Of a stretch of 64,000 bases of DNA, positions 1-17,433 are shown in pieces. The notes beneath the pieces are model-generated. The model was not told the origin of the DNA. It saw only the letters and a list, made by a program, of their open reading frames with translations, and did not search any database. Made by a program: the position numbers and the translations under genes. The first letter of the stretch is position 1; each line of letters begins with the position of its first letter. This stretch comes from Salpingoeca rosetta (lineage: Eukaryota > Protista > Choanoflagellata). Location: contig JAWQFM010000022.1 of assembly GCA_033442325.1 (NCBI GenBank), positions 712,746 through 776,745 of the forward strand, given 5' to 3'.

Positions 1-942
1 CAGCCATTGGAGCAGTCGTCGTTGTTTCGTTTGTTTGGGTTGTTGAAGAATTGATGAAATTTTCCACCTATTTTCTTCATTTCAGTCGAGGACTGAAGTC
101 AGTCTCGCGCTCTCATGGGCGGTGGTTGGTGAACGAAAGCGACAACGCTTGTCGTGGGCACTAAAAGGCCACCCTGAGGTCTGCTACAACCCGCCACAAA
201 AAAACAAACACAACAACAAAACAAAACACCAATCAAACCATTGGAGGTGAGCATGATGAGAGGATGAATGTGGAGGGGTGGAGGGAACAGGACATGCTGC
301 GAACGTGGGTGGGCATGCACGAATGCACATCCTCACAACGAACATGGTCAAGAAAGATGGGACCAAGGGACAAAGAATGCACGTGCGAACAAGCACACCA
401 AACGAATGCACGTTACATCATACACACAGGAATGTGCATACGCACATACGCAGGCGTACATACACACATACGCAGGCGTACATACACACATATGCAGTCA
501 TATATGCACATACGCGAACACAACAACACCCCCGGACAGCCCATGTTTCAAAACGCGCACACGGACGACGTTTGACGTACGCATGTCAAAGCTCTCCAGT
601 TGCTGGAGAAGCGCGTCCAGCTCTGCATATCAAACCAACACAACACCCCACCGTGAGTTGGCAGCATGCAAAGAGAGTGTGGCGGCAGCAGCATGGGCAC
701 GAAACAATCGTGGGCAGCGGCATGACAGTCAACCCCACAGCACAGCAGCACGACCACCAAGCACTACACATGCACACACACCAGCGTCCTCAGCGTCAGC
801 CATTGGAGCAGTCGTCGTTGTTTCGTTTGTTTGGGTTGTTGAAGAATTGATGAAATTTTCCACCTATTTTCTTCATTTCAGTCGAGGACTGAAGTCAGTC
901 TCGCGCTCTCATGGGCGGTGGTTGGTGAACGAAAGCGACAAC
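1..942 (+). repeat. Direct repeat: 1-146 identical to 797-942
   Basis: cagccattggagcagtcgtc...gaaagcgacaac occurs at both positions. The left copy is cut by the window edge. Confidence 0.95.
147..803 (-). CDS. 5' fragment of a protein with an N-terminal LD motif (paxillin-like LDxLLxxL), truncated by a duplication junction
   Basis: ATG at 803. Exon 803-782 (MADAEDA, GTGTGT donor), exon 622-581 (ELDALLQQLESFDM, CAG acceptor, GTACGT donor) and probable exon 161-147 (LPTTS). A second copy of the same ATG context is at positions 7-1, running out of the window. Confidence 0.55.
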
Positions 943-960
943 ACCTACAAGCAAGCAAGA

Positions 961-3942
961 ATGAGCGACAGCAAAGGCACCACCACCACTGCCACTGCCA
1001 CGACGGCAGCACATGGGCACGGGTCCAACGGGCAGGAACCCTTTTCACAGCAACAACCACAACAGCTGTACCAGCAGCAACAGCAGGAACAATCACAACA
1101 ACAATCACAGCAGCCGCAACAGCCGCACCAGCAGTCACAGCAGTTTGCAAGCGACGAAGATGAGTTTGAGACGCACACGTTTCCAAACGCCAGCTTTCGG
1201 TTGGAAAAGCGGTTCAGACCAGACAAGATTGTCGGGTATGGCGCGTACGGCGTGGTGTGTGCTGCAACAGACACGGTGAGCCAGCGCCGCGTAGCCATAA
1301 AGAAGATCTCATCCGCATTCAAACTGCCGGAGATGACAAAGCGCACGCTGCGCGAGCTGCGGTTCCTGCGCCACTTCCACTCCCACAAGAACATCATCTC
1401 CGTCCTCACCATCGCCAAGCCGCCATCGGACCTGAGCCGCTTCAACGACATCTACGTCGTCATGGAGCTGCAGGAAACAAACCTGCATCGCATCATTCAC
1501 TCGAAGCAGCCGCTCTCCGAGGAGCACGTGCGCTACTTCATGTTCCAGCTTCTCAGCGGGCTGCAGTACATCCACGCTGCCAGCGTGCTGCACCGCGACA
1601 TCAAGCCAGGCAACCTGCTCATCAACAGCGACTGCTCCCTGAAGATCTGTGACTTTGGCATGGCCCGCGCAATGGCCAGTACCCCGGAGGAGCACGCGGG
1701 GTTCATGACCGCATATGTGGCCACGCGCTGGTACCGCGCACCAGAGGTGATGCTGTCGTTCAACCGGTACACGCAGGCCATCGACGTGTGGTCGGCGGCG
1801 TGTGTGCTGGGCGAGATGCTTGGCCGGCGCTACCTGTTCCCGGGCCAGGACTACATCCACCAGCTCGTGCTCATCCTCACGCTGCTGGGATCGCCATCTG
1901 CTGAGCTGAAACGGCGCATTGGTAGTGAGCTTGCACGGCGCTATCTTGACACCCTGCCACACCTTGACCCCGTCCCGCTTCGCCAAGTCTACAGAGACGC
2001 CAGGTGTGTGTGTGTGTGTGTGACGTGTGTGTGTGTGTTTATGTGTGTATGTGTGCATGTGTATGACGTGTGTATGTGTGCATGTGTGTGTGTGTGTACT
2101 TGTGTGTATGTGTTTTTGTGTGTACTTGTGTGTATGTGTTTTTGTGTGACACATGCATGTGTTGCGTTTAGATTCTGTGCGTGTGTGACGTGTGCCATGC
2201 ACAAAGCCTCATCCAGCCTGCAACCCCCGTGCCTTCCATTCCCTTGCCCCCGCCCCCAAACACCTGCCGTCGACAGTGACACCGTGCTTGATCTGCTGAG
2301 CAAGATGCTTCAGTTTGACCCCGCCCAGCGCTGCACCGTATCCGATGCCCTGCACCACCCGTTCTTCGCCAAATACCACAGCCAGATCCCATCGGCACCG
2401 CCGTCCGTGCCCGCCTTTGACTTTGAATACGAGGTGCGCGCGCGCGTGTGTGATTGTGTGATTTGTGTGATTTGTGTGATTGTGAGTAGCTGTGCATGCA
2501 TGTATGATTGTGTGCTTGTGTGATTTTGTGACTTTGATTGTGAGTATCTGTGTGTGTGTGTGTTGTTGTTGTTGGCTGCCTGTAACCCCTGCCTGTCTGC
2601 CATCTGTACCCGAGAAACGAACACTCGCACACGTGCATTTCAACTTGTGTCACCACGTGCAGAATCGTGCGACGACGGCTGCGGAGCTGAAGGACATGAT
2701 TGTGCAGGAGGTGATGCTGTACCACACACCAGGCACACCGGTATGACCGCTTCTGCTCATATTCACTCACATGATCGCCCTGACTTTGCATTTGTCCTCC
2801 GGCACGTTGCCTGGCATACACACTGTCCGTCGCACGCTGTTTGTTCTACGCCAACACATGGCCTCACCTGAACACGCCTTCGCTGCGGCCACAGGCATAC
2901 ATGAATGCCCAATTTGCTCTCGCGAAACGCACTGTCGTCCGCAGACCATCCAACCCGCCAACAGCAGCAGCAGCAGCATCATCGTCATCATCGTCGTCTC
3001 AAACCGGAAACACGCGAGCACCCGCAGCAGCGGCACCAGCAACAACGGAGAAAGCACCACGTGAGCATGGCGCAGCAAGTACCCGCAAACGCGAGGCATC
3101 ATCAACAATACCAGTAACAGGCGGGAGTGACGCGAGTAATGGTGGTGGTGCTGCAAGCCATGCAGGTGATGGCACACATGGTGGTGGTGGTGGTGGCGGC
3201 GGTGGTGGTGTACGCAGGAGCAGCGAGTCTGCCCACGAGCGGTTGAAGGCGATGTTGCGCAGCCGGCGGTCAGCGAGCAAAGAGCAGTCCCCACATGGGG
3301 TGGCAGCAGCAACAACAAGTGCAGTGATGACGGCGCTGTCGGGTGCGACGAAGACAACAAAGGCTTCAACGAAGAAAACAGGTGGCCGTGGCCTCGCTGC
3401 ACTTCAACAGCACGCAAGACAACAACAACAGCAGCATGATGTGGTGGGGTCTTCGGTATCCGGGGTAGGCGGCATTCAGGGCGCAGCTGCCAAGCGAACA
3501 GCGGCTGAGCGAAGCAATGAGCCTGCTCCAACACCGGCAACTGCGAGAACAGCAGCAACTGCGAGAACAGCAGCAGCAGGAGGAGGAGGAGGTGAGTATG
3601 GCACTGGTGCAGCTGTGATGGTTGGTGGTGACAGTGTTTCCACGACAACTGCAGTCCCAACAACGACAACAGCAGCAGCAACAGCAACAACAACAAGCGG
3701 GTCAGCCCCAACAACCACCGCAACTGTCACGACAACGGCGCCAGGGGTGGCATCGGCGGGAGACGTGGGTGGAGGCGACGAGCAGCCGCCGAAACGGAAG
3801 AAGCGCAAGGGCCGGCGACCGCTGAACAAAGCGTTGCACCCCGATCCAACGCCAGAGACACGCGCGTCTCTCGCAGAGTTTCGCCGTTACTTCCAGCGCG
3901 GCATGGTGTGTGCGTATGCGTTTGTGTGTGTGTGTGTGTGTA

Positions 3943-4762: not shown

Positions 4763-5632
4763 NNNNNNNNNNNNNNNNNNNNNNNNNNNNNNNNNNNNNN
4801 NNNNNNNNNNNNNNNNNNNNNNNNNNNNNNNNNNNNNNNNNNNNNNNNNNNNNNNNNNNNNNNNNNNNNNNNNNNNNNNNNNNNNNNNNNNNNNNNNNNN
4901 NNNNNNNNNNNNNNNNNNNNNNNNNNNNNNNNNNNNNNNNNNNNNNNNNNNNNNNNNNNNNNNNNNNNNNNNNNNNNNNNNNNNNNNNNNNNNNNNNNNN
5001 NNNNNNNNNNNNNNNNNNNNNNNNNNNNNNNNNNNNNNNNNNNNNNNNNNNNNNNNNNNNNNNNNNNNNNNNNNNNNNNNNNNNNNNNNNNNNNNNNNNN
5101 NNNNNNNNNNNNNNNNNNNNNNNNNNNNNNNNNNNNNNNNNNNNNNNNNNNNNNNNNNNNNNNNNNNNNNNNNNNNNNNNNNNNNNNNNNNNNNNNNNNN
5201 NNNNNNNNNNNNNNNNNNNNNNNNNNNNNNNNNNNNNNNNNNNNNNNNNNNNNNNNNNNNNNNNNNNNNNNNNNNNNNNNNNNNNNNNNNNNNNNNNNNN
5301 NNNNNNNNNNNNNNNNNNNNNNNNNNNNNNNNNNNNNNNNNNNNNNNNNNNNNNNNNNNNNNNNNNNNNNNNNNNNNNNNNNNNNNNNNNNNNNNNNNNN
5401 NNNNNNNNNNNNNNNNNNNNNNNNNNNNNNNNNNNNNNNNNNNNNNNNNNNNNNNNNNNNNNNNNNNNNNNNNNNNNNNNNNNNNNNNNNNNNNNNNNNN
5501 NNNNNNNNNNNNNNNNNNNNNNNNNNNNNNNNNNNNNNNNNNNNNNNNNNNNNNNNNNNNNNNNNNNNNNNNNNNNNNNNNNNNNNNNNNNNNNNNNNNN
5601 NNNNNNNNNNNNNNNNNNNNNNNNNNNNNNNN
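4763..5632. other. Assembly gap (N run)
   Basis: N characters, with (TG)n on the left and (CA)n on the right. Confidence 1.
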
Positions 5633-5690
<58 letters not shown>

Positions 5691-5707
5691 CACAACACAC
5701 ACACACC

Positions 5708-7218
5708 GTTGCGCTTGAGTTGGCAGGACCGCCAAAGTCAAAGGTAAAGGCCACGGGTTTCTGTTGTTGCAATGACGGGCACCAGCCAATGCCATACCGG
5801 TTAGAGCGCGATTGAGAGATGCGTTTTGGTTAAGGTGGAGTTGGGATCGAGGTAAACGTTCCGCGTACAGAAAACAACAAGCAGCATTGTGCGCACAAAC
5901 GGTCGAAGACAAACCATCAACAGCAAGTGTGTGTGTGCGTGTGTGTAAACGGTTGCCTTTGAATCTGCAGATGCACACACACGCGCGCGCGCGCGCACAC
6001 ACACACACTCATGTGAACAGCTGTGCTTCTTCACCTTGACTGTTTGCCGCTGCACTGCCGTCTCCTGCACCGTACGCAGGGGCTCTGTGTACACATGCGC
6101 ACACGCGCACACGCAAGTGAGGCGAAGTTGTACATGAGAACTCACGTGCTGCAGATGATGACTCGCTTGAACAAAGCAACGCACATGGCGCAGGCTATTA
6201 CACACAAACATGCATCCACACAAAACACGCAGGTACACGGACACGCACACACGATGTGTTCGCAGTGCGCACCTCGTGGGGAGCCGATTGCGGTTGCAAA
6301 CGGAGGAATGTTCGTCGTGGCCTTTCCCCATGCCTTGCGGCGAGTGTCAAGCTTCGGCTAAAGTGAAGAAATGTGGTGCGAGAATGACACGATCACACAT
6401 GGGGGTCAAATGGCATGCAAGAGACAACCCGAAAGCGTCACACTCCCATGCAGCCAAACAGCCTCTCAGACACACAGCTGGTCTACACAAGCTGCTGGTC
6501 ATGCCACACAAACACACACGCACGCAAGCTTTTGCGGATATGCATGTGCACATGCGCGTGTACGCATGTGCACATATACACGCACCTCTGGTGCATCCAA
6601 CTCTGCCTTCTTCGTGGCCGGTGCTGCGTTGATGAAGTTTGTTGTCTCGAGGAAGTTGCTCGAGCGGAGATGGGGTGGCAGCGCAGCCTGCAGGAAAACA
6701 ACAGGAGTGTGAAACAGAGTGCGAGACAGACAGATGTAAGGGTGGACGTTGGTGTTATCACCAACATGGGATGAGAATGCCACAGTGTGACATACAAGAC
6801 ACGACACACACGCACACACGCGCGCGCACACACACACACACATACACACGCACATACATATACACACACTCGGATACACACACTCACCCATACCCATGCT
6901 CACACATATGAAAGCGCACAATTGCACACGAGCGAAGCATGCAAAGAGCAGGTATGTGCATGGGTGCTCGTGGAAGTCTCACGTTACGGCGCTTGAGTTC
7001 TTCAATTCGGCTGTCATCTGTCGGCTTGTAATAGTCCTTGCTTTGTGTCTGCTCCGCCCACGCCTGGCGGTGGTGCCGGGGGCCGGGCATGCGAGCCTCT
7101 TGTTGCTGTGGCGGCCGTGATTGCTGTGCTTGCAGCGGACTTGGCTGTGCGTGCGTGTGTTTGAAAAAGCGTGTAAATTCATATGTGTGTGTGTTTGCAA
7201 GGATACTTGCACAGAACA

Positions 7219-7255
<37 letters not shown>

Positions 7256-10027
7256 ACAAAGGGTCGCACAAAACAAGTGTGTGCGTCCTGACAGCATCAA
7301 AGTGGAAGGGCGGCAAGTGCATGACCCAAGCAGGTCTTCGAAGCAACCAAGACATCACGAATTGCATATACTTGACCGAAATTACCTGATGCTGTGCAGC
7401 AAGCTCACGGCGCATGTTCATGCTTGACTTTGGCGTGCTGACCTGGGCAACCGGCGTCTACATTGAACACAACCACCCGTGACACACATGTATGTGGTTT
7501 GCTGCTGAGTGTTCCAGGCCACAATGGCGGTTGCACAGACAAGACAAACCTAGTACACACCGCTGCGCTCGCTATGTTTCGCTCATCATGTCAACTTCGC
7601 ACGCATCTCCCAATTGCATGCGTTTGCATGGCATACGCACGCATTTGCACGTGTGCGCACGTCTGCACCCAATGTTCACGGCTCACATAGCTTACCGTGG
7701 CGGGAGATGCGTTGCGGCTTGCTTGTTTGAGCATCTCGGTCTTGCGCACCTCCACCTGCGTCTCGTGCTTGAGGCGTTCAATCAGACGGTTGTAATCGCG
7801 CAGCAGCAGCGTGTTCTGCTTCTTCTTTCGCGCCAATTCCTCCTGCGCGTCTGCCAGCTGCTGTTTGAGGTGGAACACCTGTGCCTGCGCTTCTTCCACG
7901 GCCTGACTGTTCTGTGAAGTGCTGTCTTGCTGCGCTTTGAGCTGGCTGCGCAGCTGGGCGTTTTCCCGCTCCGCCGCAGACACGCGCGCGCGCATGCGTG
8001 ACTGCTCAGACTGCAGGTCCTCCAGCTGCGCGCGTGTTGCTGCCAGTCGCTGCGACAGCGCATGCATCTCATCCGACTTTGCGGCGTTGTCGCTCGTGAG
8101 CGCCTCCACTTGATCCTCCAACTCCCGCACGCGTCCCGTAGAGCTCACCGCCTGTATCATGCGTCAGATGTGCGTACATGTGCCAATGTATGTGTCCATG
8201 CATGAGTCAGATGTGTGTTTCGGACAGGTACAGTCTGCGTGAGCACACCACAGAAGTGTGGTGGGGAGCACATGAGCACACACACACATCCAAACACATA
8301 CACGTACACACATACATACACACACACACACATCCAAACACATACACACACGCACGCACACACAAACACACGTACACACAGTAATTCCCAAAGTACAAGG
8401 GACACCTCCACTTGTGGCACACCTTCATCTGGTGCTGAGAGCAAGCGGATTTGTACTGCTCGCACGATTCCTGCAACTCGGAGATGGCTTGCTTCATTTC
8501 GTACTCCTTCACCTCAAACTCCTGTGACATCTGCAGCAGCCTATGGCACACAGCGAACCATGTGACACGCCAGCATACAACACGCGTGAGAAAAAACGGC
8601 TTTGTGCATCATGTGTGGTTATGTTGTGTTTGTGTGCGTGATTATGTTCTGCGTCAATATGCCAAATTGTATGCCGTGTGTGTGTGTGTGTGTGGATTTG
8701 TGAAGTGTGGCCGTGCGAGTGAATACGTCCTTCACTCCATCAGAACCAAAGATATGCGTTGCAAGTACCTGTCTCGCTCCTGCGACATGGAGGACACTTC
8801 TGCTCGCAGCTCGTTCAGGCTTGTGCGCAGACGCGCGTTGTCTGCCTCAAGTTCGGCTGCGTCGCTCTGCTTGGTCATGGCCTCCTGGCTCACTTGCTTC
8901 TGCACCACCGCCAGCTCTGCCTTGAGGGACTTCACCTGCGCCTCTGCATTCTCTGCCGCGTTTCTCTGGCCAAGCAAACACAAGAAACCGGTGTGTGCAT
9001 GCATGGATGTGTGAAAGGTGAGCATGTCAATTTGACACTGACAAGTTGCAAAAACCACAAATCGTGGTATCAGCGTTTTCACAGCTGCGTACACACAGCC
9101 GCACACACAAACAAACAAACAAACAAACAAACAAACAAACAAACAAACAAACAAACAAACAAACAAACAAACAAACAAACAAACAAACAAACAAACAAAC
9201 AAACAAACAAACAAACAAACAAACAAACAAACAAACAAACAAACAAACAAACAAACAAACATGCACACAAAACCTATTTTCAGACACCCATTTACACGTG
9301 GTGCAACTTACCCATGCTGAGAGCTCTCCCTCGAGCTCGCTGACACGTGTGCGGTCCTTCTGCAGCTCAGAGATGCGGCGGCGCGAAGACGACTCCTGGC
9401 ACTCCAACTTCTTCGCCAACACCGCCTTCTCCTCCTGCATGCGGTCACGTGCTTCAAGCGCGTCGCTCAGTTGGCGCTCAACAACACGCAGCTGGTCCAG
9501 CTCCTCGTTGGCGTGCTCCAGCTGCCGCTTCATCCTGACAACACACGCACATACACACATGCAGGCGATGTTGGGATGATCGTAAGCCAGGCGCAATTCA
9601 GTGGGTATGTGTGGATGTGTGCATGGGTATGTGTGTATCCTTTTGTGTGTGTGTGCGCGTGTGTGTGCGTGTGTATATGTATGCATGCGTGCATGCATGA
9701 ATGACAAAACTTTGGGAAAATGGTGCGAATTACTACAGCGTGTTGCACAAACATCTAGAAAGACACAAGCAGCCCCAGTTCAACACCATACCGGTCAAAT
9801 CTTCCGCGCACATCACGCAGCTCGTCGAGTTCCGTCCTGGCGTCCTCCAACTCCGCCTCAAAGCGATCAGCACGCTCAGCCTATTGATGGCGGATTGGTC
9901 GGTGTTCGCAGTGTGTGACGTGAGTTCGTGAGGTGGGGTGACAGTAGGGGTGCAGAATGAAGCAGGCATGGTGCAAGCATGTGTGGCTGATTGTTGACAT
10001 GTGGTGTTGCGTCAAAGCACAAACAGC

Positions 10028-10082
<55 letters not shown>

Positions 10083-10664
10083 CTCATGTCGTGAGCGTCA
10101 TTGCGAAAGCTCACCTTGATTGTGAGTGCTGCCACTTGCGCACTCCTCTCCTTCAGTTCTTCTTGAAGCTCATGCAGCTCTGCAACCAACCAAAAAAAAA
10201 AAAAAAAAAGACACCGGCAGATGTCAGCCACGTGAGGAATACCGAATACTTTTGAACCTCACGTCACAACTGAGACGAGGGCATTCCATACATGCGTGCA
10301 GAGCTGTACTCGCAACAGTCAAACGCTCACCTTCGCGGAGATCGTCGTTCTCAGTGTTGACGCGCTGTGTGTGGGGCCAACATGCCAGCAGGCAGCAATG
10401 ACAGGTAAACCAAAGTGTCAGCAAGCGGTTCAATTGTACATGCAAAGGCAATTGTTCACAAGTACACGCAAGGCAATGGTTCACAGGACCTCAAGCATCA
10501 CATGGGCACACAATGCATAACCACCTACAAGCGCAACACAACACACCCACACGCACGCGCACGCCACATACCACCCAACACATGCACATGTACACACAAC
10601 ACGCACGCCACACACCACACAACACAAACACACACACACGCACGCACGCACACACACACACACG

Positions 10665-10710
<46 letters not shown>

Positions 10711-11459
10711 CGCACACACCTCGAGGGCGCGCTTTGCGGCCTTTCGTGAGGAGATTGGTGTGTGGAGCAGGCGGTGCTGGTGGGGCGTGCGGAGCAGGCG
10801 GTGCTGGTGGGGCGTGCGCACCATGCAGCGCGAAGGCGGACGCATGCTGCCAACACGTGACGTGGGTGTTTGCGGCGTCTGTGGCCGACCGGGCATGCTC
10901 ATGCTCATGCTCATGCTGAGGGGGTCGCTGTGGCTGGCGTGGCTGTGGGCACTGGGTGACGCCGGTGACTGTTGGTCTGGTGACTCAGCGCCCATCTCTG
11001 GAGTGAGCAGCGATGCAGCGAGCTCACGAAGACTTTCGAGATGCTGCACGTGCTCGTCAGACATGTCTTGCAGCGCACTGAACAGTACAAGCAGGCACAT
11101 GGCAATGTGGTGATGTGAGGATGTGAGGGTGTTGGGTGTGTGTTGGTGTGTTTACTGCGCAAAGTCTGCGCAAATACGAAGCGAGAGAGAGAGAGAGTGT
11201 GTGTGTGTGTGCGTGAGTGTGTGTGTGTGTGTGCTCGGATTAAACACAGTGCTAACTCACTCATAGTATTTGATAGGCGCCTTCTCGTCGAGGGAGGCCA
11301 GGGTGAGGAGAGCAATCATCTGTAAAGCCAAAGTAACGGCAACAGCATAGAGGTGTCGGAGGGAAGGAGAGACGTGAGTGTAAGTGAGAGCGCATGCATG
11401 CGCCAGTTCATGCATGTGCACAAGCACCGACCACTGTGTGCGTTCACGCAAGGACAATT

Positions 11460-11517
<58 letters not shown>

Positions 11518-12397
11518 ACACACACGCAAATACCATAAATCCAACAAAACTTACGCACACACACACGCACAGGCTAACACAGCACCTTGATGATTTCTGC
11601 AGCGTTTCCTTGCTCAATTTGGTCTGTGTGAATGTGACCTCCAAGTCGCATTTCAAAGCATGCCTCCAGAATGGCCAAGACGGTCTTGCAGCTGCTCTCG
11701 CGCTGAGGCACAGGTGACTTCCAGCAGCTGAATGGCAGAGCAAGGAAGAAGGTTTGTGTGTGTGCGTGTGTGTGAAGGGGCGACGCTTGGCCACACATGT
11801 GAGTGGGTCGAATTAACTTGGGCGCATAAAACACTCATCGAGAGCCGCACGCATCTTGCACACAGAAGCGCAGCGCCAAATACAACCACAACCACAACCA
11901 CAACCACAACCACAACCACAACCACAACCACAACCACAACCACAACCACAACCACAACCACAAATACAATCACAAATACAATCACAAATACAATCACAAA
12001 TACAACCACAACCACAACCACAACCACAACCACAAATACAATCACAACCACGACCACACATAAACAAAACAAACACGGCTATTGCCACTCACATGGTGCG
12101 GGCCTCTTCCTCAAGGATCTTGCAGTCTGCAAGCGCAGTGAGGCTGCTGATCTCCTTGCCAGAGATCTTTGTCAGCTGCAGTATGGTTCATGATTAGTTT
12201 GTTGGTCGTGCCGTGTTGTGTTTGTAGTGAGAGGGCAGGAGCGTGGCTATGGTTCGCACGTGGTTGTTGCTGGAGACAGTCTGTACCGACACAGTGGCAT
12301 CTGGAGATGTTGCTATTGCGACGGCGCTGGTCACGCATCGATGCTCTTAGCATCGTGTGCTTACCCAGTCGATGAGGCAGGTGGTCATCTGCTCCAT
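5708..12397 (-). CDS. NuMA/Mud/LIN-5-like protein: HOOK-type CH head, coiled coil and NLM motif; 3' end lies in the gap
   Basis: Head exons: 12397-12365 [11 protein letters not shown]; ~12177-12092 [28 protein letters not shown]; ~11723-11587 ...[14 protein letters not shown]; ~11319-11261 [19 protein letters not shown]; ~11077-10720 SP/TP-rich. Coiled-coil exons lie between ~10360 and 7696. Tail exons: 7144-6983 ...[12 protein letters not shown] joined in phase 0 to 6687-6586 [14 protein letters not shown]...; 6064-6035; 5760-5708 KPVAFTFDF. Confidence 0.75.
9108..9260. repeat. (CAAA)n tetranucleotide microsatellite, intronic
   Basis: About 38 perfect units. Confidence 0.95.
11463..11515. 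repeat. (GA)n microsatellite, intronic
   Basis: Seen directly. Confidence 0.95.
11883..12056. repeat. (CAACCA)n/(CAAATACAATCA)n hexamer satellite, intronic
   Basis: Seen directly. Confidence 0.9.
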
Positions 12398-13130: not shown

Positions 13131-16100
13131 ATGATCTGTGGTCAAAGTAGTCGGTTAGCCCGGCTGGCAACAACACCCGTCTGGGTGCGCCATGCCTCGC
13201 TGATTACCCACCGCCATCAACTGAGCGATCCCCGCATCGCGCGCCGCGTCGTGATCAAGCTCGGCTCGGCAGTGATCACCCGGCAGGACGAAGTCGGTGT
13301 CGCCCTTGGCCGCATGGCCTCCATCATCGAACAGGCCTCTGAGCTCCAGCAGCAGGGCCGCGAGGTGATCCTCGTCACCAGCGGTGCCGTGGCCTTTGGC
13401 AAGCAGCTCCTGCAGCAGCAGCACGCGCTGTCGCGGTCCATTCGACAGACGCTCAAGGTTGGCGGCCGCCATACCCTCGGCGGCGTCGATCCCCGCGCCG
13501 CCTCCGCCGCTGGCCAGGGTGGCCTTGTCTCCCTCTACCAGTCCATGTTCTCCCAGTACGGCATCACCTGTGCCCAGGTGCTTGTCACCAAGAACGACTT
13601 CCGCGCCCGCTCCACCGTCAACAACCTCACCGATACCCTCAACGAGCTTCTTTCCATGAACGTCATCCCCGTCATCAACGAGAACGACGCCGTGTCCCCG
13701 CCAGGCATGCAGGACGCCGACCTTGACGGCGTGCTCAGCGTACTTGACAACGACTCCCTTGCCGCCAACGTCGCCAAGCAAGTCGGCGCCGATGCCCTCC
13801 TCCTCCTCTCCGACGTCGATGGCATCTACAGGTGCGTTTGTGGTTGTTGTTGTTGTTGTTATCTGTGTGTGTGTGTGCGTGTGTGTGTGCACGCGTGTGG
13901 TTTTGCGCACTCGCTCTTGCTCTTGCCTTTGCCCTTTGCACTTGTGCGCGATTGTTCCCTTTCCAACCCCCCTGCCCTGCCCTTTTTTGCGCATCTCCTT
14001 TCTTTCTCCTCACACACCCACTCCCCCAAATGCATGCATGCACACACGCAAACATGACCATGCACACACGCAAACATGACAAATCATCCATGGATTTGTG
14101 TGCAGTGGCCCTCCTGACAAGAAGACGTCCCGTCTCCTGGACCGGTACTGCCCGAGCAAGGACCCAGACGTCACCTTTGGCGGCGGCTCCAAGGTTGGCC
14201 GTGGTGGCATGCAGGCCAAGGTCGACTCTGCCACGTGGGCTTGGCGCAACGGCACCGCCGTCATCATCGCCAACGGAACCAAGCTCAACACCATCAAGGC
14301 CGTCACCTCTGGCGAGCGCGTGGGCACCTTCTTCACCAGCGAGGAGTCGATGCGCGCCAACGTGGAGGAGCAATGCAAGGCGGTCCGCAGCGGCGGCCGC
14401 AAGCTGTCCCAGCTGCCTGCCGACCAGCGCCGCGCCATCATTGAGCGCCTTGCAGACCTCCTTCTCGAGCGCGAGTCTGAGATTATGAAGGCCAACCAGC
14501 GCGACATCAAGGCTGCCGTTGCCTCCAAGACCTCCGATGCCCTCGTTGCCCGCCTCTCCCTCACCTCGTCCAAGCTCAAGTCCCTCGCTGACGGCCTTCG
14601 CCAGATTGCCGCCGGCTGCGATACGCACATTGGCCACATCCTCAAGAAGACAAAGGTCGGCTTTTGTTGCGGTGCTCATCCAGCTCGCTGCTTGCTTTGT
14701 ACGCACATGAGCTGTTGTTGTCTTTTGTTCTTTTGTTTGTTTGTGTTGGATGCATGTGTGCTTGGCTTTCCTGCTCAAAACAAGCCTTCCCTCATCCTCA
14801 CACCGATCCACAACCGCGCACACCCTCTCCCTTGTGCTCCTCCTCCTCCTCCTCCTGTTGGTTTGTTGCGGTGCAGATTGGCGAGGGTTTGGTGCTGCAG
14901 CAGGAGACTGTGCCCATTGGCGTGCTGATGGTCATCTTCGAGTCCCGCCCCGACTGCCTGCCCCAGGTCTCTGCCCTCGCCATCGCCAGCGGCAACGGCC
15001 TCCTCCTCAAGGGCGGCAAGGAAGCAAAGCACAGCAACGCATACCTCCACAGCCTCGGTACGCGCGCGTGTGTGTGTGTTTGCTTTGTGTGTTTGTGTCT
15101 GTGTGTGTCTGTGTGTGTATGGATGTGCGTCTGTGTCTGTGTCTGTCCGTTGCCTTGTATCTGTTGCGCTTGTGCCGGTGCATGTGCCATGTTCATCATT
15201 GAAGTGTCTCACATGTTTTTGTTTGTGTGCTCTTCGTGTTTGCAGTGCAAGAGGCGCTCTCGATGCACGTTGATCCCCAGACCGTCACACTCGTCAGCAC
15301 CCGCGAGGGTGTCTCCTCCCTCCTCGAGGTAAAGGCCGCACCCACTATGCACCCGTGTTGTTTCGTCCACACACGCCCGTGCCGCCTCCTTGTTGTACCC
15401 TCGTTTGCAATCCTGATGCATTCTCACATTTTTTCCTCCATACACGTGTGTGTTTTTTGTGTGTGGTTTCTGTACTTCAGCTTGAGGGCATGATTGACCT
15501 CATCATCCCACGCGGCAGCAACGAACTCGGTTAGCGCCTCACATCGTGGTTACTTGCATTGTTTGCTCGTGTCCTCTATATGTGCGTGTGTCTATGACTG
15601 CACTGGTGCGCGCCACTGTGTGTGTGTGTGTGTGTTGTTAATTTGTTTTGTTCATCCAGCCTCACACCCCATGTGTGCTGTTGTGCCCCTGCAGTGAAGA
15701 ACATCCAGGACCAGGCTGGCGGCATCCCCGTGATGGGCCACGCCGATGGCATCTGCCACGTGTACATGGACAAGGACGCCGATCCGCAGAAGGCCATCGA
15801 GGTTGTCATCGACGCCAAGACAGACTACCCTGCCGCATGCAACGCCATGGAGACGCTGCTCGTGCACCGCGACCTCGTCAACACGGACGCCTTCAACGAC
15901 GTTCTTCGCGGACTCAAGAAGGCCGGCGTACGTTCACGCCCTGCCGCCGTCTGTCTCTATCTGTCTCTGTCTGTCTGTATGAAGTCGCGCTACGAACCTT
16001 GTATTGGTGTGCATGTGCATGTCACTTTGTTGGCCCATGTGCACCCGTGTGTACTGTGCACGACTTTGATTCGCTCACGCTGATGTTGGCCGCGTGCGAC

Positions 16101-17433
16101 GTGTTGGGTGTGCGCAGGTGAAGGTGCACGTTGGTCCCCGCCTGGACGAGCTTGTTGCGCTTGGCGGTCCCCCTGTCGACGACTACCACATTGAGTACGG
16201 CGAGCTCGAGTGCACCGTCGAGGTCGTTGATGACACCGACGCAGCCATTAACGTGAGTACCGCGATGAAGTTGCGAAGACTGTGCCATGCTGGTGATTGA
16301 TTATGTTATGTTATCGTCATGCATATTGTGGTTCTGTTGCCGTGCCTGTTTTTGTATTTGCAGTTTTGCATGCCAAGCACTCCAGCAACACCGTTTCCTC
16401 CTCACACTTGACCTTTTCTCTTGCTCCTCTTCTTTCCCTTCCTCCCCCCCCCTTTTAGCACATTCACGACTACGGCAGCTCCCACACGGACGTGATCCTC
16501 ACAGAGAACAAGGACACCGCCAAGAAGTGCGTTGCGCGTGCGTGTGTGTGTGTGTGTGTGTGTTCGATGTCCTGAACACCCACCTCCTGCCTCTTTCCTT
16601 CTCCCACCACGACCGCGCAGTCTTTAATGAACCTCACACACGAATGGCGTATTGTCTTTCCTCGCTCTCCCCCCCCCCAAAAAAACCAAAAACGTTTTCA
16701 GGTTCCTGAACGAGGTTGACAGCGCGTGCGTCTTCTGGAACGCCAGCAGCCGCTTTGCCGATGGTCAGTGAGATGTCCTTGGTATCTCGAATGCCCATGC
16801 CTGTGTCACCCACCATTTGTCGCGTGCGCTACTGCCGACACATTGATTGCAGCGATATGGCCCACAAGCCGGTTTGGTAACTTCACACTCATCCCTCCTT
16901 TTTTCCTCCCCCCCCCCCCCACCACAAACAAATGCGACCATACGTGTGCAGGCTACCGCTTTGGCCTTGGTGCTGAGGTTGGCATCTCCACATCGCGCAT
17001 CCACGCCGTAAGTCGCCCTGGGGTGCACACGACATCACATTGCGCTACTCCGCCATGGCGAAGAGAAAATACCCGGCAGTGAATGTTGTTGTGGTCATGT
17101 TGTTGCTGCCCTTGTTCATCCGTACGCCTGCCTGGCTGGTGCACTCCACCCGCCATCTTGATCGTCCACACCATCGTTCATGCTCGTCTGCACCATCGCT
17201 CACACATTTTATTCCTCCCCCCTTCTCTCTCTCTCCTCGCTTTCTCTTCGTTTCCTCGTGCTTTTTTGTGTGCGAACCCCCAGCGCGGTCCCGTTGGCGT
17301 TGAGGGTCTGCTGACGACCAAGTGGAAGCTCGTTGGCCACGGCCACACCGTCAAGGAGTTCAACACGGGCGAGCTCGACTATGTCTTTGAGAAGCTGCCT
17401 CTCGACTCTGGTGACGCCGCAGACGACGCGTAA
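13131..17433 (+). CDS. ALDH18A1: Delta-1-pyrroline-5-carboxylate synthase (bifunctional glutamate 5-kinase/glutamyl-phosphate reductase)
   Basis: Motifs [99 protein letters not shown] and [14 protein letters not shown] across about 11 exons. Arg-rich N-terminus resembles a mitochondrial presequence. Confidence 0.97.

What the first reader, a model, noticed from the sequence alone, without database searches (positions are those of the whole stretch)
6586..7060. NLM core conserved but the LGN/Pins-binding EPE motif is absent
Seen: the residues before the conserved core are [11 protein letters not shown]. Known: animal NuMA/Mud carry ...QDEPEQLDD/EDE-type acidic residues at this position, and these dock in the LGN/Pins TPR groove next to the microtubule-binding segment. 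Inference: this may be an ancestral, microtubule-binding NuMA not yet wired to the Galphai-Pins cortical pathway. That would be a testable step in the origin of oriented cell division.
Basis: partly seen in the sequence, partly recalled or inferred. Interest (0 to 1): 0.8.

Follow-up and report, generated by a model that had tools for sequence, protein, structure and literature searches.

The report
Choanoflagellate NuMA-like protein lacking EPE
The window holds an expressed, unnamed Salpingoeca rosetta gene that looks like a compact relative of the animal spindle protein NuMA; it really lacks the acidic Glu-x-Glu patch that human NuMA uses to dock on LGN/Pins, but worm LIN-5 lacks that patch too, so this does not show that the protein is uncoupled from Pins.

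Summary
Observation confirmed. The gene is PTSG_08124 of Salpingoeca rosetta (XP_004991145.1, "hypothetical protein"), on the minus strand. RNA-seq joints show that exon 7144-6983 (...[31 protein letters not shown]) is spliced directly to exon 6687-6586 ([14 protein letters not shown]...). No extra exon lies between them, and there is no Glu-x-Glu anywhere in the 176 known residues after the coiled coil.

The protein has a Hook-like N-terminal domain, about 370 residues of coiled coil, and a C-terminal NLM-like motif. It is best read as a compact (about 800 aa) member of the NuMA/Mud/LIN-5 family. It is invisible to HMMER and Pfam searches and is not mentioned in any paper of the held library.

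The inference "not yet wired to Pins" is not established.
- C. elegans LIN-5 has SPDSLPDF with two phosphoserines where NuMA has EPEQLDDW.
- Fly Mud's acidic stretch lies about 30 residues further upstream.
- Conservation N-terminal of the NLM ends abruptly outside vertebrates.
- S. rosetta has a Pins orthologue.
- In ungapped register with the crystallised human peptide, S. rosetta keeps Trp for Phe1888, Asp for Glu1896, and the Arg-Ile anchor.

Binding could not be tested here. No orthologue could be retrieved. The true C-terminus lies in an assembly gap. The scan has a sibling note on this same gene (s1-440279), and nothing on other DNA.

The parts
5633..12397 (-). Whole gene PTSG_08124 (S. 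rosetta): ATG at 12397, 18 exons, ORF still open where it meets the assembly gap
   Evidence: Gene model from RNA joints, GT..AG checks and public protein P0001 = XP_004991145.1.
10720..12397 (-). Exons 1-5 (12397-12365, 12175-12093, 11691-11586, 11319-11261, 11077-10720): Hook-like N-terminal domain followed by a Ser/Pro-rich linker
   Evidence: ESM Atlas, residues 1-125: features score 0.91 to HOOK_N clusters; structure TM 0.80 to a NUMA1-fragment cluster (PF21670) and 0.76 to HOOK_N. Pfam HMMs give no hit. My own AF2 model is poor. No reads were laid on these exons.
7696..10364 (-). Exons 6-11 (10364-10331, 10179-10115, 9880-9792, 9534-9312, 8965-8769, 8540-8423, 8151-7696): central coiled coil
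   Evidence: Translation. Only coiled-coil families match weakly in Pfam. Joints for 8541-8768 and 8152-8422 are read in RNA. Exons upstream of 8966 rest on splice-site logic and the public model.
7386..7457 (-). Exon 12 (72 nt): [24 protein letters not shown], start of the basic, Ser/Thr-Pro-containing linker
   Evidence: Joints 7457|7696 and 7144|7386 in RNA.
6983..7144 (-). Exon 13 (162 nt): PSPLQ...[31 protein letters not shown]. This is the stretch that in NuMA would be the LGN-binding peptide, plus the first half of the NLM.
7013..7045 (-). [11 protein letters not shown], the residues the finding is about (P0001 677-687); no Glu-x-Glu
   Evidence: Register table against the human peptide.
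7058..7060 (-). Trp codon (P0001 W672), 17 residues before the Arg-Ile pair, the same spacing as human Phe1888
   Evidence: The role of Phe1888 is from PMC3438535.
6983..7018 (-). [12 protein letters not shown]: first half of the NLM-like motif, including the Arg-Ile pair that equals human Arg1905/Ile1906
   Evidence: Best local match to PDB 3RO2_B/6HC2_B peptide.
6688..6982 (-). Intron that splits the NLM-like motif (GTGAGA...CTGCAG); no read depth inside
6586..6687 (-). Exon 14 (102 nt): [34 protein letters not shown]. It holds the second half of the NLM-like motif (6687-6646). It also holds the start of the only acidic patch of the tail, AELDAPEPKLD, which runs on into exon 15.
   Evidence: The match of PPHL..LE to human NuMA rests on memory.
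6273..6357 (-). Exon 15: [28 protein letters not shown]
   Evidence: Joints 6357|6586 and 6084|6273.
6035..6084 (-). Exon 16 ([17 protein letters not shown]), missing from the public gene model
   Evidence: Joints 6084|6273 and 5760|6035 in RNA. Comparison with P0001.
5633..5760 (-). Exon 17 ([19 protein letters not shown]...). It runs without a stop through a (TG)n tract to the edge of the gap.
4763..5632 (.). Assembly gap (N run) that hides the 3' end of the gene. One transcript contig has about 239 nt more than the assembly shows.

Best explanation
PTSG_08124 is the Salpingoeca rosetta member of the NuMA/Mud/LIN-5 family, in a compact form of about 800 residues, close to the size of LIN-5.

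Inferred way of working:
- The N-terminal Hook-like domain and the following coiled coil engage the dynein light-intermediate chain and dynactin, as in NuMA.
- The coiled coil makes the protein a dimer.
- The C-terminal 'tip' with the NLM-like motif ([12 protein letters not shown]|[14 protein letters not shown]) binds microtubules.

The stretch just before the NLM really has no Glu-x-Glu. I read it as the fast-evolving short linear docking segment of the family, not as proof of an unwired ancestor. It keeps the frame of the human LGN-binding peptide: Trp at -17 for Phe1888, Asp at -9 for Glu1896, Asp-Asp, and Arg-Ile at 0/+1. It is rich in Ser, Thr and Tyr. If it docks on S. rosetta Pins, it would do so weakly or only after phosphorylation, as LIN-5 does with pSer659/pSer662.

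Shown here: expression, exon structure, the sequence, absence of ExE, and partial similarity to the crystallised human peptide.
Inferred: family membership, dynein and microtubule binding, and any Pins docking.

I put family membership at about 0.8. I put the 'degenerate or conditional Pins docking at this stretch' part at about 0.4, and that is the confidence given below.
For: Identity and expression:
- RNA joints and depth.
- Public protein P0001 = XP_004991145.1 of S. rosetta.

Architecture:
- Hook-like N-terminus.
- Coiled coil.
- NLM-like motif at the right place, directly after the coiled coil and linker.

Human peptide FYMGTCQDEPEQLDDWNRIAELQQRN verified in PDB 3RO2_B and 6HC2_B.

Register table, with contact roles of Phe1888, Gln-Asp-Glu 1894-1896, Glu-Pro-Glu 1896-1898 and Arg1905/Ile1906 taken from PMC3438535:
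- W/F at -17
- T/T at -13
- D/E at -9
- D/D at -3
- R/R and I/I at 0/+1

Literature:
- LIN-5 uses SPDSLPDF with two phosphoserines in place of EPEQLDDW. The authors note that exact residues of this site are poorly conserved (PMC5053539).
- Conservation N-terminal of the NLM ends abruptly outside vertebrates, and Mud uses a differently placed acidic stretch (PMC12505299).
- S. rosetta and M. brevicollis have Pins orthologues very similar to metazoan ones in sequence and domain architecture (PMC4718807).
Against: - No statistically significant sequence homology to any NuMA-family protein was obtained. HMMER on the longest exon found only the gene itself plus coiled-coil noise. Three word-indexed searches found only self. 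Pfam gave nothing, and the PDB only coiled coils.
- The Hook fold rests on ESM Atlas comparisons only. My AF2 model was too poor to test it (pLDDT 46).
- The second half of the NLM comparison rests on a human sequence recalled from memory.
- At the positions of human Asp1895 and Glu1898, S. rosetta has Lys and Tyr, and the whole linker is net basic. That argues against docking in the basic TPR groove.
- An aromatic residue at -17 is expected by chance about 6% of the time.
- No phosphorylation data exist.
Confidence: 0.4

Rival explanations
1. This is a NuMA that binds microtubules (and dynein) but has no link to Pins. Coupling of NuMA to the Pins TPR groove arose later, in the animal stem, when an acidic short motif was gained next to the NLM.
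For: - No ExE anywhere in the 176 known tail residues. The upstream linker has 4 acidic against 9 basic residues, with Lys and Tyr at the places of human Asp1895 and Glu1898.
- In S. rosetta another animal link of Pins is also missing: its Dlg GK domain does not bind its own Pins linker (PMC4718807). Stepwise assembly of the complex therefore has a precedent.
Against: - The absence of ExE at the aligned place is shared with LIN-5, which does bind GPR-1/2.
- Mud's docking stretch is also not alignable.
- A Pins orthologue with a well-conserved TPR domain exists in S. rosetta and needs ligands.
- The aromatic, Asp and Arg-Ile frame is kept.
- Polarity (ancestral or derived) cannot be set from one species.
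- The C-terminus is incomplete.
Confidence: 0.3
2. Not a NuMA relative at all. It would be a lineage-specific Hook-domain coiled-coil dynein adaptor (HOOK-like or CCDC88-like) whose C-terminal tail resembles the NLM by chance.
For: - No significant hit to any NuMA-family sequence or model.
- The tool-verified part of the motif match is only 12 residues. 3.2% of shuffles reach its score somewhere in this Glu/Leu/Arg-rich protein.
- HOOK_N clusters score as well as the NuMA cluster.
Against: - The match lies in the tail at the NuMA-like position, where 0.7% of shuffles reach it.
- If my recalled human sequence is right, the match continues ungapped for 26 residues (z = 9).
- Pfam HOOK (PF05622) and HOOK_N give no hit.
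Confidence: 0.15
3. It is a NuMA relative that does bind Pins, but through another part of the tail. Candidates are the acidic patch AELDAPEPKLD 14 residues after the NLM, or the part of the C-terminus hidden in the assembly gap.
For: - AELDAPEPKLD is the only acidic cluster of the tail.
- The annotated C-terminus is wrong, and up to about 239 nt of mRNA are unassembled.
- The position of the docking stretch relative to the NLM differs between NuMA and Mud.
Against: - In NuMA, Mud and LIN-5 the docking site is N-terminal of the NLM.
- ELD..PEP is not an ExE.
- Most of the missing 239 nt are probably 3' UTR.
Confidence: 0.1

Closest known systems
Human NuMA (NUMA1), C-terminal 'Tip': LGN-binding peptide plus NLM / microtubule-binding domain 1
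   Same: - Order of parts: Hook-type N-terminal domain, long coiled coil, disordered linker, then the NLM.
- [12 protein letters not shown] aligns ungapped with DWNRIAELQQRN of the crystallised peptide, including the Arg1905/Ile1906 equivalents.
- An aromatic residue lies 17 residues upstream and an acidic residue 9 upstream.
   Different: - About 800 residues against 2115.
- No Gln-Asp-Glu/Glu-Pro-Glu: S. rosetta has S-K-D-Y-Y there.
- The linker is net basic.
- No detectable match to the NuMA LGN-binding domain, clustering motif, NLS or second microtubule-binding domain.
- The NLM is split by an intron at a different place from the human exon 23/24 border.
C. elegans LIN-5
   Same: - Compact size (821 aa by my recollection).
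- Coiled coil plus C-terminal NLM.
- No Glu-x-Glu at the docking core. LIN-5 has SPDSLPDF, and its charge comes from Asp plus phosphoserines (PMC5053539). S. rosetta has DYYKPTDD(S), with Asp plus Ser, Thr and Tyr.
   Different: - LIN-5's binding site (638-667) was mapped experimentally and its phosphorylation shown. Nothing is known for S. rosetta.
- The Ser-Pro-Asp-Ser GSK3/CK1 pattern is not present.
- The LIN-5 sequence could not be fetched here for a direct alignment.
Drosophila Mud (Mud-Tip: Pins-binding domain plus NLM)
   Same: - The tip is encoded by a few consecutive exons.
- Sequence N-terminal of the NLM is not alignable with NuMA.
- The S. rosetta tip exons 12-14 are all in-frame multiples of three, so they could in principle be skipped as in the fly 'Tipless' isoforms.
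   Different: - Mud has an acidic stretch (NLAMEDEE; EDE 1939-1941) predicted to fill the Pins TPR channel. S. rosetta has no acidic stretch upstream.
- In arthropods the NLM lies in one exon; here it is split.
- No exon-skipping joint was among those listed.
HOOK1-3 / other Hook-domain dynein adaptors
   Same: N-terminal Hook (CH-like) domain followed by a coiled coil.
   Different: - No hit to Pfam HOOK or HOOK_N.
- The C-terminal tail carries an NLM-like motif instead of an organelle-binding region.

Membership tests
NuMA/Mud/LIN-5 | N-terminal Hook (CH-like) domain that binds dynein light-intermediate chain | tested here: met
   Met at fold level only. ESM Atlas, residues 1-125: features 0.91 with 179 of 256 shared to HOOK_N clusters; structure TM 0.80 (120 residues aligned) to a NUMA1-fragment cluster carrying PF21670, and 0.76 to HOOK_N. 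Caveats: Pfam HMMs give no hit. My own AF2 model (pLDDT 46) gave no usable match. Binding was not tested.
NuMA/Mud/LIN-5 | Long central coiled coil (dimerisation) | tested here: met
   Residues about 215-618 of P0001 match only coiled-coil families and chains. The heptad-rich sequence is seen.
NuMA/Mud/LIN-5 | C-terminal NLM motif (about 30 residues) within the microtubule-binding tip | tested here: met
   The first 12 residues match the PDB-verified human peptide (7 of 12 identical, ungapped; 0.7% of shuffles in the tail). The further 14 residues (PPHL..LE) match a human sequence recalled from memory (z = 9). That sequence was not verifiable with these tools.
NuMA/Mud/LIN-5 | Acidic Glu-x-Glu type stretch N-terminal of the NLM that fills the LGN/Pins TPR channel | tested here: not met
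   No E-x-E in the 176 tail residues. S-K-D-Y-Y stands at the place of Q-D-E-P-E. This feature is not universal in the family: LIN-5 has SPDSLPDF with phosphoserines.
NuMA/Mud/LIN-5 | Statistically significant sequence homology to family members | tested here: not met
   Only self in three word-indexed searches. HMMER with exon 11 found self plus coiled-coil hits. Nothing in Pfam or the PDB. No full-length or NLM-profile HMMER search was possible.
NuMA/Mud/LIN-5 | Binding to Pins/LGN TPR, to microtubules and to dynein-dynactin | not testable with these tools
   No multimer prediction is on offer, and no access to the S. rosetta Pins sequence. Needs the bench or AlphaFold-Multimer.
HOOK family | Pfam HOOK coiled-coil/C-terminal region (PF05622) after the Hook domain | tested here: not met
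   No hit at E <= 10.

The most novel reading that the evidence does not exclude
NuMA existed in the common ancestor of choanoflagellates and animals as a Hook-domain, NLM-bearing spindle protein that was not coupled to Pins. Both proteins were present, but the acidic docking motif next to the NLM, and with it cortical Galpha-i/Pins/NuMA force generation, was added only on the animal stem. This would parallel the late origin of the Dlg-Pins link.
Probability: 0.25. Interest if true: 0.8.

Novelty: new member of a known kind. Interest (0 to 1): 0.45.

Why it matters
The Galpha-i/Pins(LGN)/NuMA complex is the core machine for oriented cell division in animals. How it was assembled in evolution is an open question.

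Work on S. rosetta has shown that Pins is present but does not bind Dlg there (PMC4718807). In the library searched, no paper names a choanoflagellate NuMA.

This gene gives that missing third partner a candidate: an accession, an RNA-supported exon structure, and a defined peptide of about 35 residues. The Pins-NuMA link can now be tested directly in the closest living relatives of animals, by pull-down, by AlphaFold-Multimer, or by the genome editing available in S. rosetta.

The absence of EPE by itself is weak evidence, because the docking segment evolves fast within animals too.

Tried and rejected
- **Reads over the whole gene.** I laid 5660-9100 instead, so exons upstream of 8966 have no read support.
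- **PDB search with the S. rosetta peptide.** The 50-residue peptide around the NLM gave no hit at E <= 10. The crystallised NuMA peptides end only 7-8 residues into the NLM, so this says little.
- **Orthologues.**
  - Three word-indexed protein searches (C-terminal 640-760, N-terminal 1-125, whole length) returned only the query.
  - Two metagenome scans found nothing.
It returned the gene's own public model plus coiled-coil hits.
  - One hit, P0003 (41% identical, 165 aa), lies on an 885-nt metagenome contig, too short to reach the NLM.
- **Family and fold searches.**
  - Pfam on the whole protein and on four parts gave only coiled-coil noise.
  - ESM Atlas on the tail gave nothing usable.
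  - AF2 of residues 1-125 without an alignment gave pLDDT 46. Foldseek and VIA-align on it gave only chance-level rows, so I do not use them.
- **Text sources for the human NLM.** Searches for strings of the human NLM to verify my memory found nothing. A PDB search with the recalled second half also found nothing.
- **Human peptides typed as queries.** I also typed the recalled second half, and inside the script.
- **Rejected idea.** That an unmodelled exon between the coiled coil and the NLM supplies an ExE. The joints are direct and intron depth is zero.
Full report
**What is there**

The finding lies in a multi-exon gene on the minus strand. I laid two raw RNA-seq runs and the transcript contigs of two further runs on 5660-9100. 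This gave eight introns, all GT..AG on the minus strand: 5761-6034, 6085-6272, 6358-6585, 6688-6982, 7145-7385, 7458-7695, 8152-8422 and 8541-8768. First mates lie almost only on the + strand. In the usual stranded libraries that means an RNA from the minus strand.

The spliced reading frame runs as follows.
- It starts in a coiled coil.
- Exon 12 gives [24 protein letters not shown].
- Exon 13 gives [54 protein letters not shown].
- Exon 14 gives [34 protein letters not shown].
- Three more exons follow.

The core itself is split by intron 6688-6982. That joint is read by 17 and 3 reads and by two contigs. Read depth inside the intron is zero in all four runs. The refuting condition "an unmodelled exon supplies an ExE motif" is therefore not met for the region before the NLM.

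**Which gene**

An exhaustive HMMER search with the longest exon (7696-8151, minus strand) returned a 783-residue protein that contains this exon. The exact look-up names it XP_004991145.1 / EGD76773.1 / F2UI24, "hypothetical protein PTSG_08124 [Salpingoeca rosetta]". The window is therefore from the choanoflagellate S. rosetta.

The public model agrees with my RNA-guided model except at two places.
- It uses an acceptor 39 nt further upstream for exon 3. This adds 12 residues inside the N-terminal domain, and I have no reads there.
- Its last 24 residues are contradicted by the RNA joints 6273|6084 and 6035|5760. The real tail continues [17 protein letters not shown]|[19 protein letters not shown].

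The real tail then runs without a stop through a (TG)n tract into the assembly gap 4763-5632. One transcript contig has about 239 nt more than the assembly shows. The true C-terminus is unknown.

The public model also contains a 34-nt micro-exon (10364-10331) that I had missed. It fits the reading phase, and I accept it.

**Is it a NuMA relative?**

Sequence searches do not say so.
- Pfam gives only sub-threshold coiled-coil families.
- The PDB gives only coiled coils.
- Three word-indexed searches return only the query.
- Two metagenome scans found nothing.

The case rests on architecture.

(i) N-terminal domain. For residues 1-125, the ESM Atlas gives HOOK_N clusters by language-model features (0.91). 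By structure it gives TM 0.80 to a cluster of NUMA1 fragments carrying PF21670 (HOOK_N_NuMA) and 0.76 to HOOK_N. My own AlphaFold model without an alignment was too poor to add anything (pLDDT 46).

(ii) Coiled coil. About 400 residues of coiled coil follow.

(iii) The NLM-like motif in the tail. I verified with the PDB that the human LGN-binding peptide reads FYMGTCQDEPEQLDDWNRIAELQQRN (3RO2_B, 6HC2_B).
- Its best local alignment anywhere in the S. rosetta protein is DWNRIAELQQRN with [12 protein letters not shown].
- That alignment is ungapped, with 7 of 12 identical.
- 3.2% of shuffled peptides do as well somewhere in this Glu/Leu/Arg-rich protein, and 0.7% in the tail alone.
- From memory, human NuMA continues RVCPPHLKTCYPLE. 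With that added, the match is 26 residues, ungapped, z = 9.
- I could not verify the added part. No PDB chain and no held paper carries it.

Taken together I put family membership at about 0.8.

**The missing motif**

In the human complex the peptide runs along the TPR channel. The contact points below are from PMC3438535.
- Phe1888 sits where Trp sits in Inscuteable.
- The Gln-Asp-Glu triplet (1894-1896) occupies the place of Inscuteable's Glu-x-Glu.
- Glu-Pro-Glu (1896-1898) lies two residues out of register.
- Arg1905 and Ile1906 insert into an acidic and a hydrophobic pocket.
- The C-terminal part forms a helix against the first TPR helices.

Anchored on Arg-Ile without gaps, S. rosetta reads as follows.

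| Position relative to Arg | S. rosetta | Human |
|---|---|---|
| -17 | Trp | Phe1888 |
| -13 | Thr | Thr |
| -11 to -9 | Ser-Lys-Asp | Gln-Asp-Glu |
| -8 | Tyr | Pro |
| -7 | Tyr | Glu1898 |
| -3 | Asp | Asp |
| 0 / +1 | Arg-Ile | Arg-Ile |

A Lys and two Tyr stand in the acidic core. There is no E-x-E in the 176 tail residues, and the 66-residue linker before the motif has 4 acidic against 9 basic residues. But the outer frame of the peptide is kept, and one of the central acidic positions is conservatively kept (Asp for Glu1896). An aromatic at -17 would occur by chance about 6% of the time, so this is a hint and no more.

**Why the inference does not follow**

The premise that animal NuMA/Mud carry acidic ExE residues "at this position" holds for vertebrates only.
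- Finegan et al. 2025 report that the LGN-binding domain is found in vertebrates and one hemichordate. They report that conservation ends abruptly N-terminal of the NLM in invertebrates. They also report that Mud's candidate docking stretch (NLAMEDEE, EDE 1939-1941) lies in a Pins-binding domain (1928-1982) that only reaches the first ten residues of the NLM. That puts it some 30 residues further upstream than in NuMA (PMC12505299).
- Portegijs et al. 2016 mapped the GPR-1/2 site of LIN-5 to residues 638-667. They align its core SPDSLPDF with human EPEQLDDW. Two of the four negative charges come from phospho-Ser659 (GSK3) and phospho-Ser662 (CK1). They note that exact residues are poorly conserved (PMC5053539).

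An animal member that demonstrably binds its Pins-like partner thus also lacks EPE. The S. rosetta stretch ([13 protein letters not shown]) has six phosphorylatable residues. Ser688 (Ser-Arg-Ile-Glu) fits a minimal CK2 pattern; this is my own reading and is untested.

On the partner side, Anderson et al. [quoted passage not shown] They also showed that S. rosetta Dlg does not bind S. rosetta Pins (PMC4718807). That gives the stepwise-assembly idea a precedent. It equally means that a conserved TPR domain is present and needs ligands.

**Verdict on mechanism**

- Shown: the gene is expressed, the exon structure is as given, and the tail has an NLM-like motif and no ExE.
- Inferred, about 0.8: it is the choanoflagellate NuMA/Mud/LIN-5 homologue. 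It would work as a dimeric dynein adaptor with a microtubule-binding tip.
- Open: whether it touches Pins.

| Reading | Weight |
|---|---|
| The pre-NLM stretch is a degenerate or phosphorylation-dependent docking site, as in LIN-5 | about 0.4 |
| Chance motif in an unrelated Hook-domain protein | about 0.15 |
| Docking elsewhere in the tail, including the part lost in the gap or the only acidic patch AELDAPEPKLD (P0001 725-735) | about 0.1 |

None of this can be settled with the tools at hand. There is no multimer prediction, no access to the S. rosetta Pins sequence, and no orthologues.

**Novelty and interest**

No paper in the held library mentions PTSG_08124 or a choanoflagellate NuMA. 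The two papers that treat the spindle-orientation complex in choanoflagellates deal with Dlg, Pins and KHC-73 only. The gene is therefore a new, very divergent member of a known family.

Its value is that it makes the Pins-NuMA link testable in the sister group of animals. The specific point of the finding, the absence of EPE, is real. It is also ordinary for non-vertebrate members, so I score the finding in the middle.

The scan holds a sibling first-reader note on the same gene (s1-440279) and a withheld follow-up. It has nothing on other DNA.

**Housekeeping**

I also used both in my own scripts.

Noticed in passing
window 5633-6272 (minus strand): The public gene model's last 24 residues ([24 protein letters not shown]) are contradicted by RNA joints 6273|6084 and 6035|5760. 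Two real exons encode [17 protein letters not shown] and [19 protein letters not shown].... The ORF then runs through (TG)n into the assembly gap 4763-5632, so the stop codon is unknown.
   Followed up: partly
window 6586-7457 (exons 12, 13, 14): The three exons that encode the linker and the NLM-like tip are 72, 162 and 102 nt, all multiples of three in phase 0. They could be skipped in frame, as the 'Tipless' Mud isoforms are in Drosophila. No skipping joint was among those listed by the read tool, which left five joints unshown.
   Followed up: partly
window 11586-11730 (minus strand): There are two in-frame acceptors 39 nt apart for exon 3, both CAG|CTGC. The public model uses the upstream one, which puts [12 protein letters not shown] inside the Hook-like domain. 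No reads were laid here, so which one is used is open.
   Followed up: no
L001:170-667 (ENA metagenome assembly ERZ840577, contig of 885 nt): P0003, 165 aa, is 41% identical to the coiled-coil exon 11 (for example VAAERENLQLRAHIK against [15 protein letters not shown]). It may be a fragment of the orthologue in an uncultured relative. It is too short to reach the NLM.
   Followed up: partly
window 9107-9261 and many introns (for example 6780-6900, 7200-7250): The introns of this gene are filled with microsatellites ((CA)n, (ACGC)n, a GTTTGTTC-like repeat). The one at 9107-9261 stops the read-laying tool. Reads from other CA-repeat loci pile up at 5927-5946 and 6505-6526 and give false 'opposite strand' joints and the A>C at 6511.
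   Followed up: no
window 268-2523 (+ strand): The neighbouring gene encodes a MAP-kinase-like protein with a long Gln-rich N-terminus. Its activation loop reads T-A-Y (FMTAYVATRWYRAPE) rather than TEY, TGY or TPY.
   Followed up: no
window 13131-17433 (+ strand): The neighbouring gene on the other side looks like delta-1-pyrroline-5-carboxylate synthase (glutamate 5-kinase part, then the reductase part). This is read from the ORF translations only.
   Followed up: no
other pieces of the same genome (scan notes s1-436323, s1-440509): First-reader notes describe a Pins/LGN-type TPR protein with a degenerate SH3 in place of GoLoco motifs, and a GoLoco motif fused to an SH2 domain. If real, S. 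rosetta has more than one LGN-type TPR scaffold to test against the PTSG_08124 tail.
   Followed up: no
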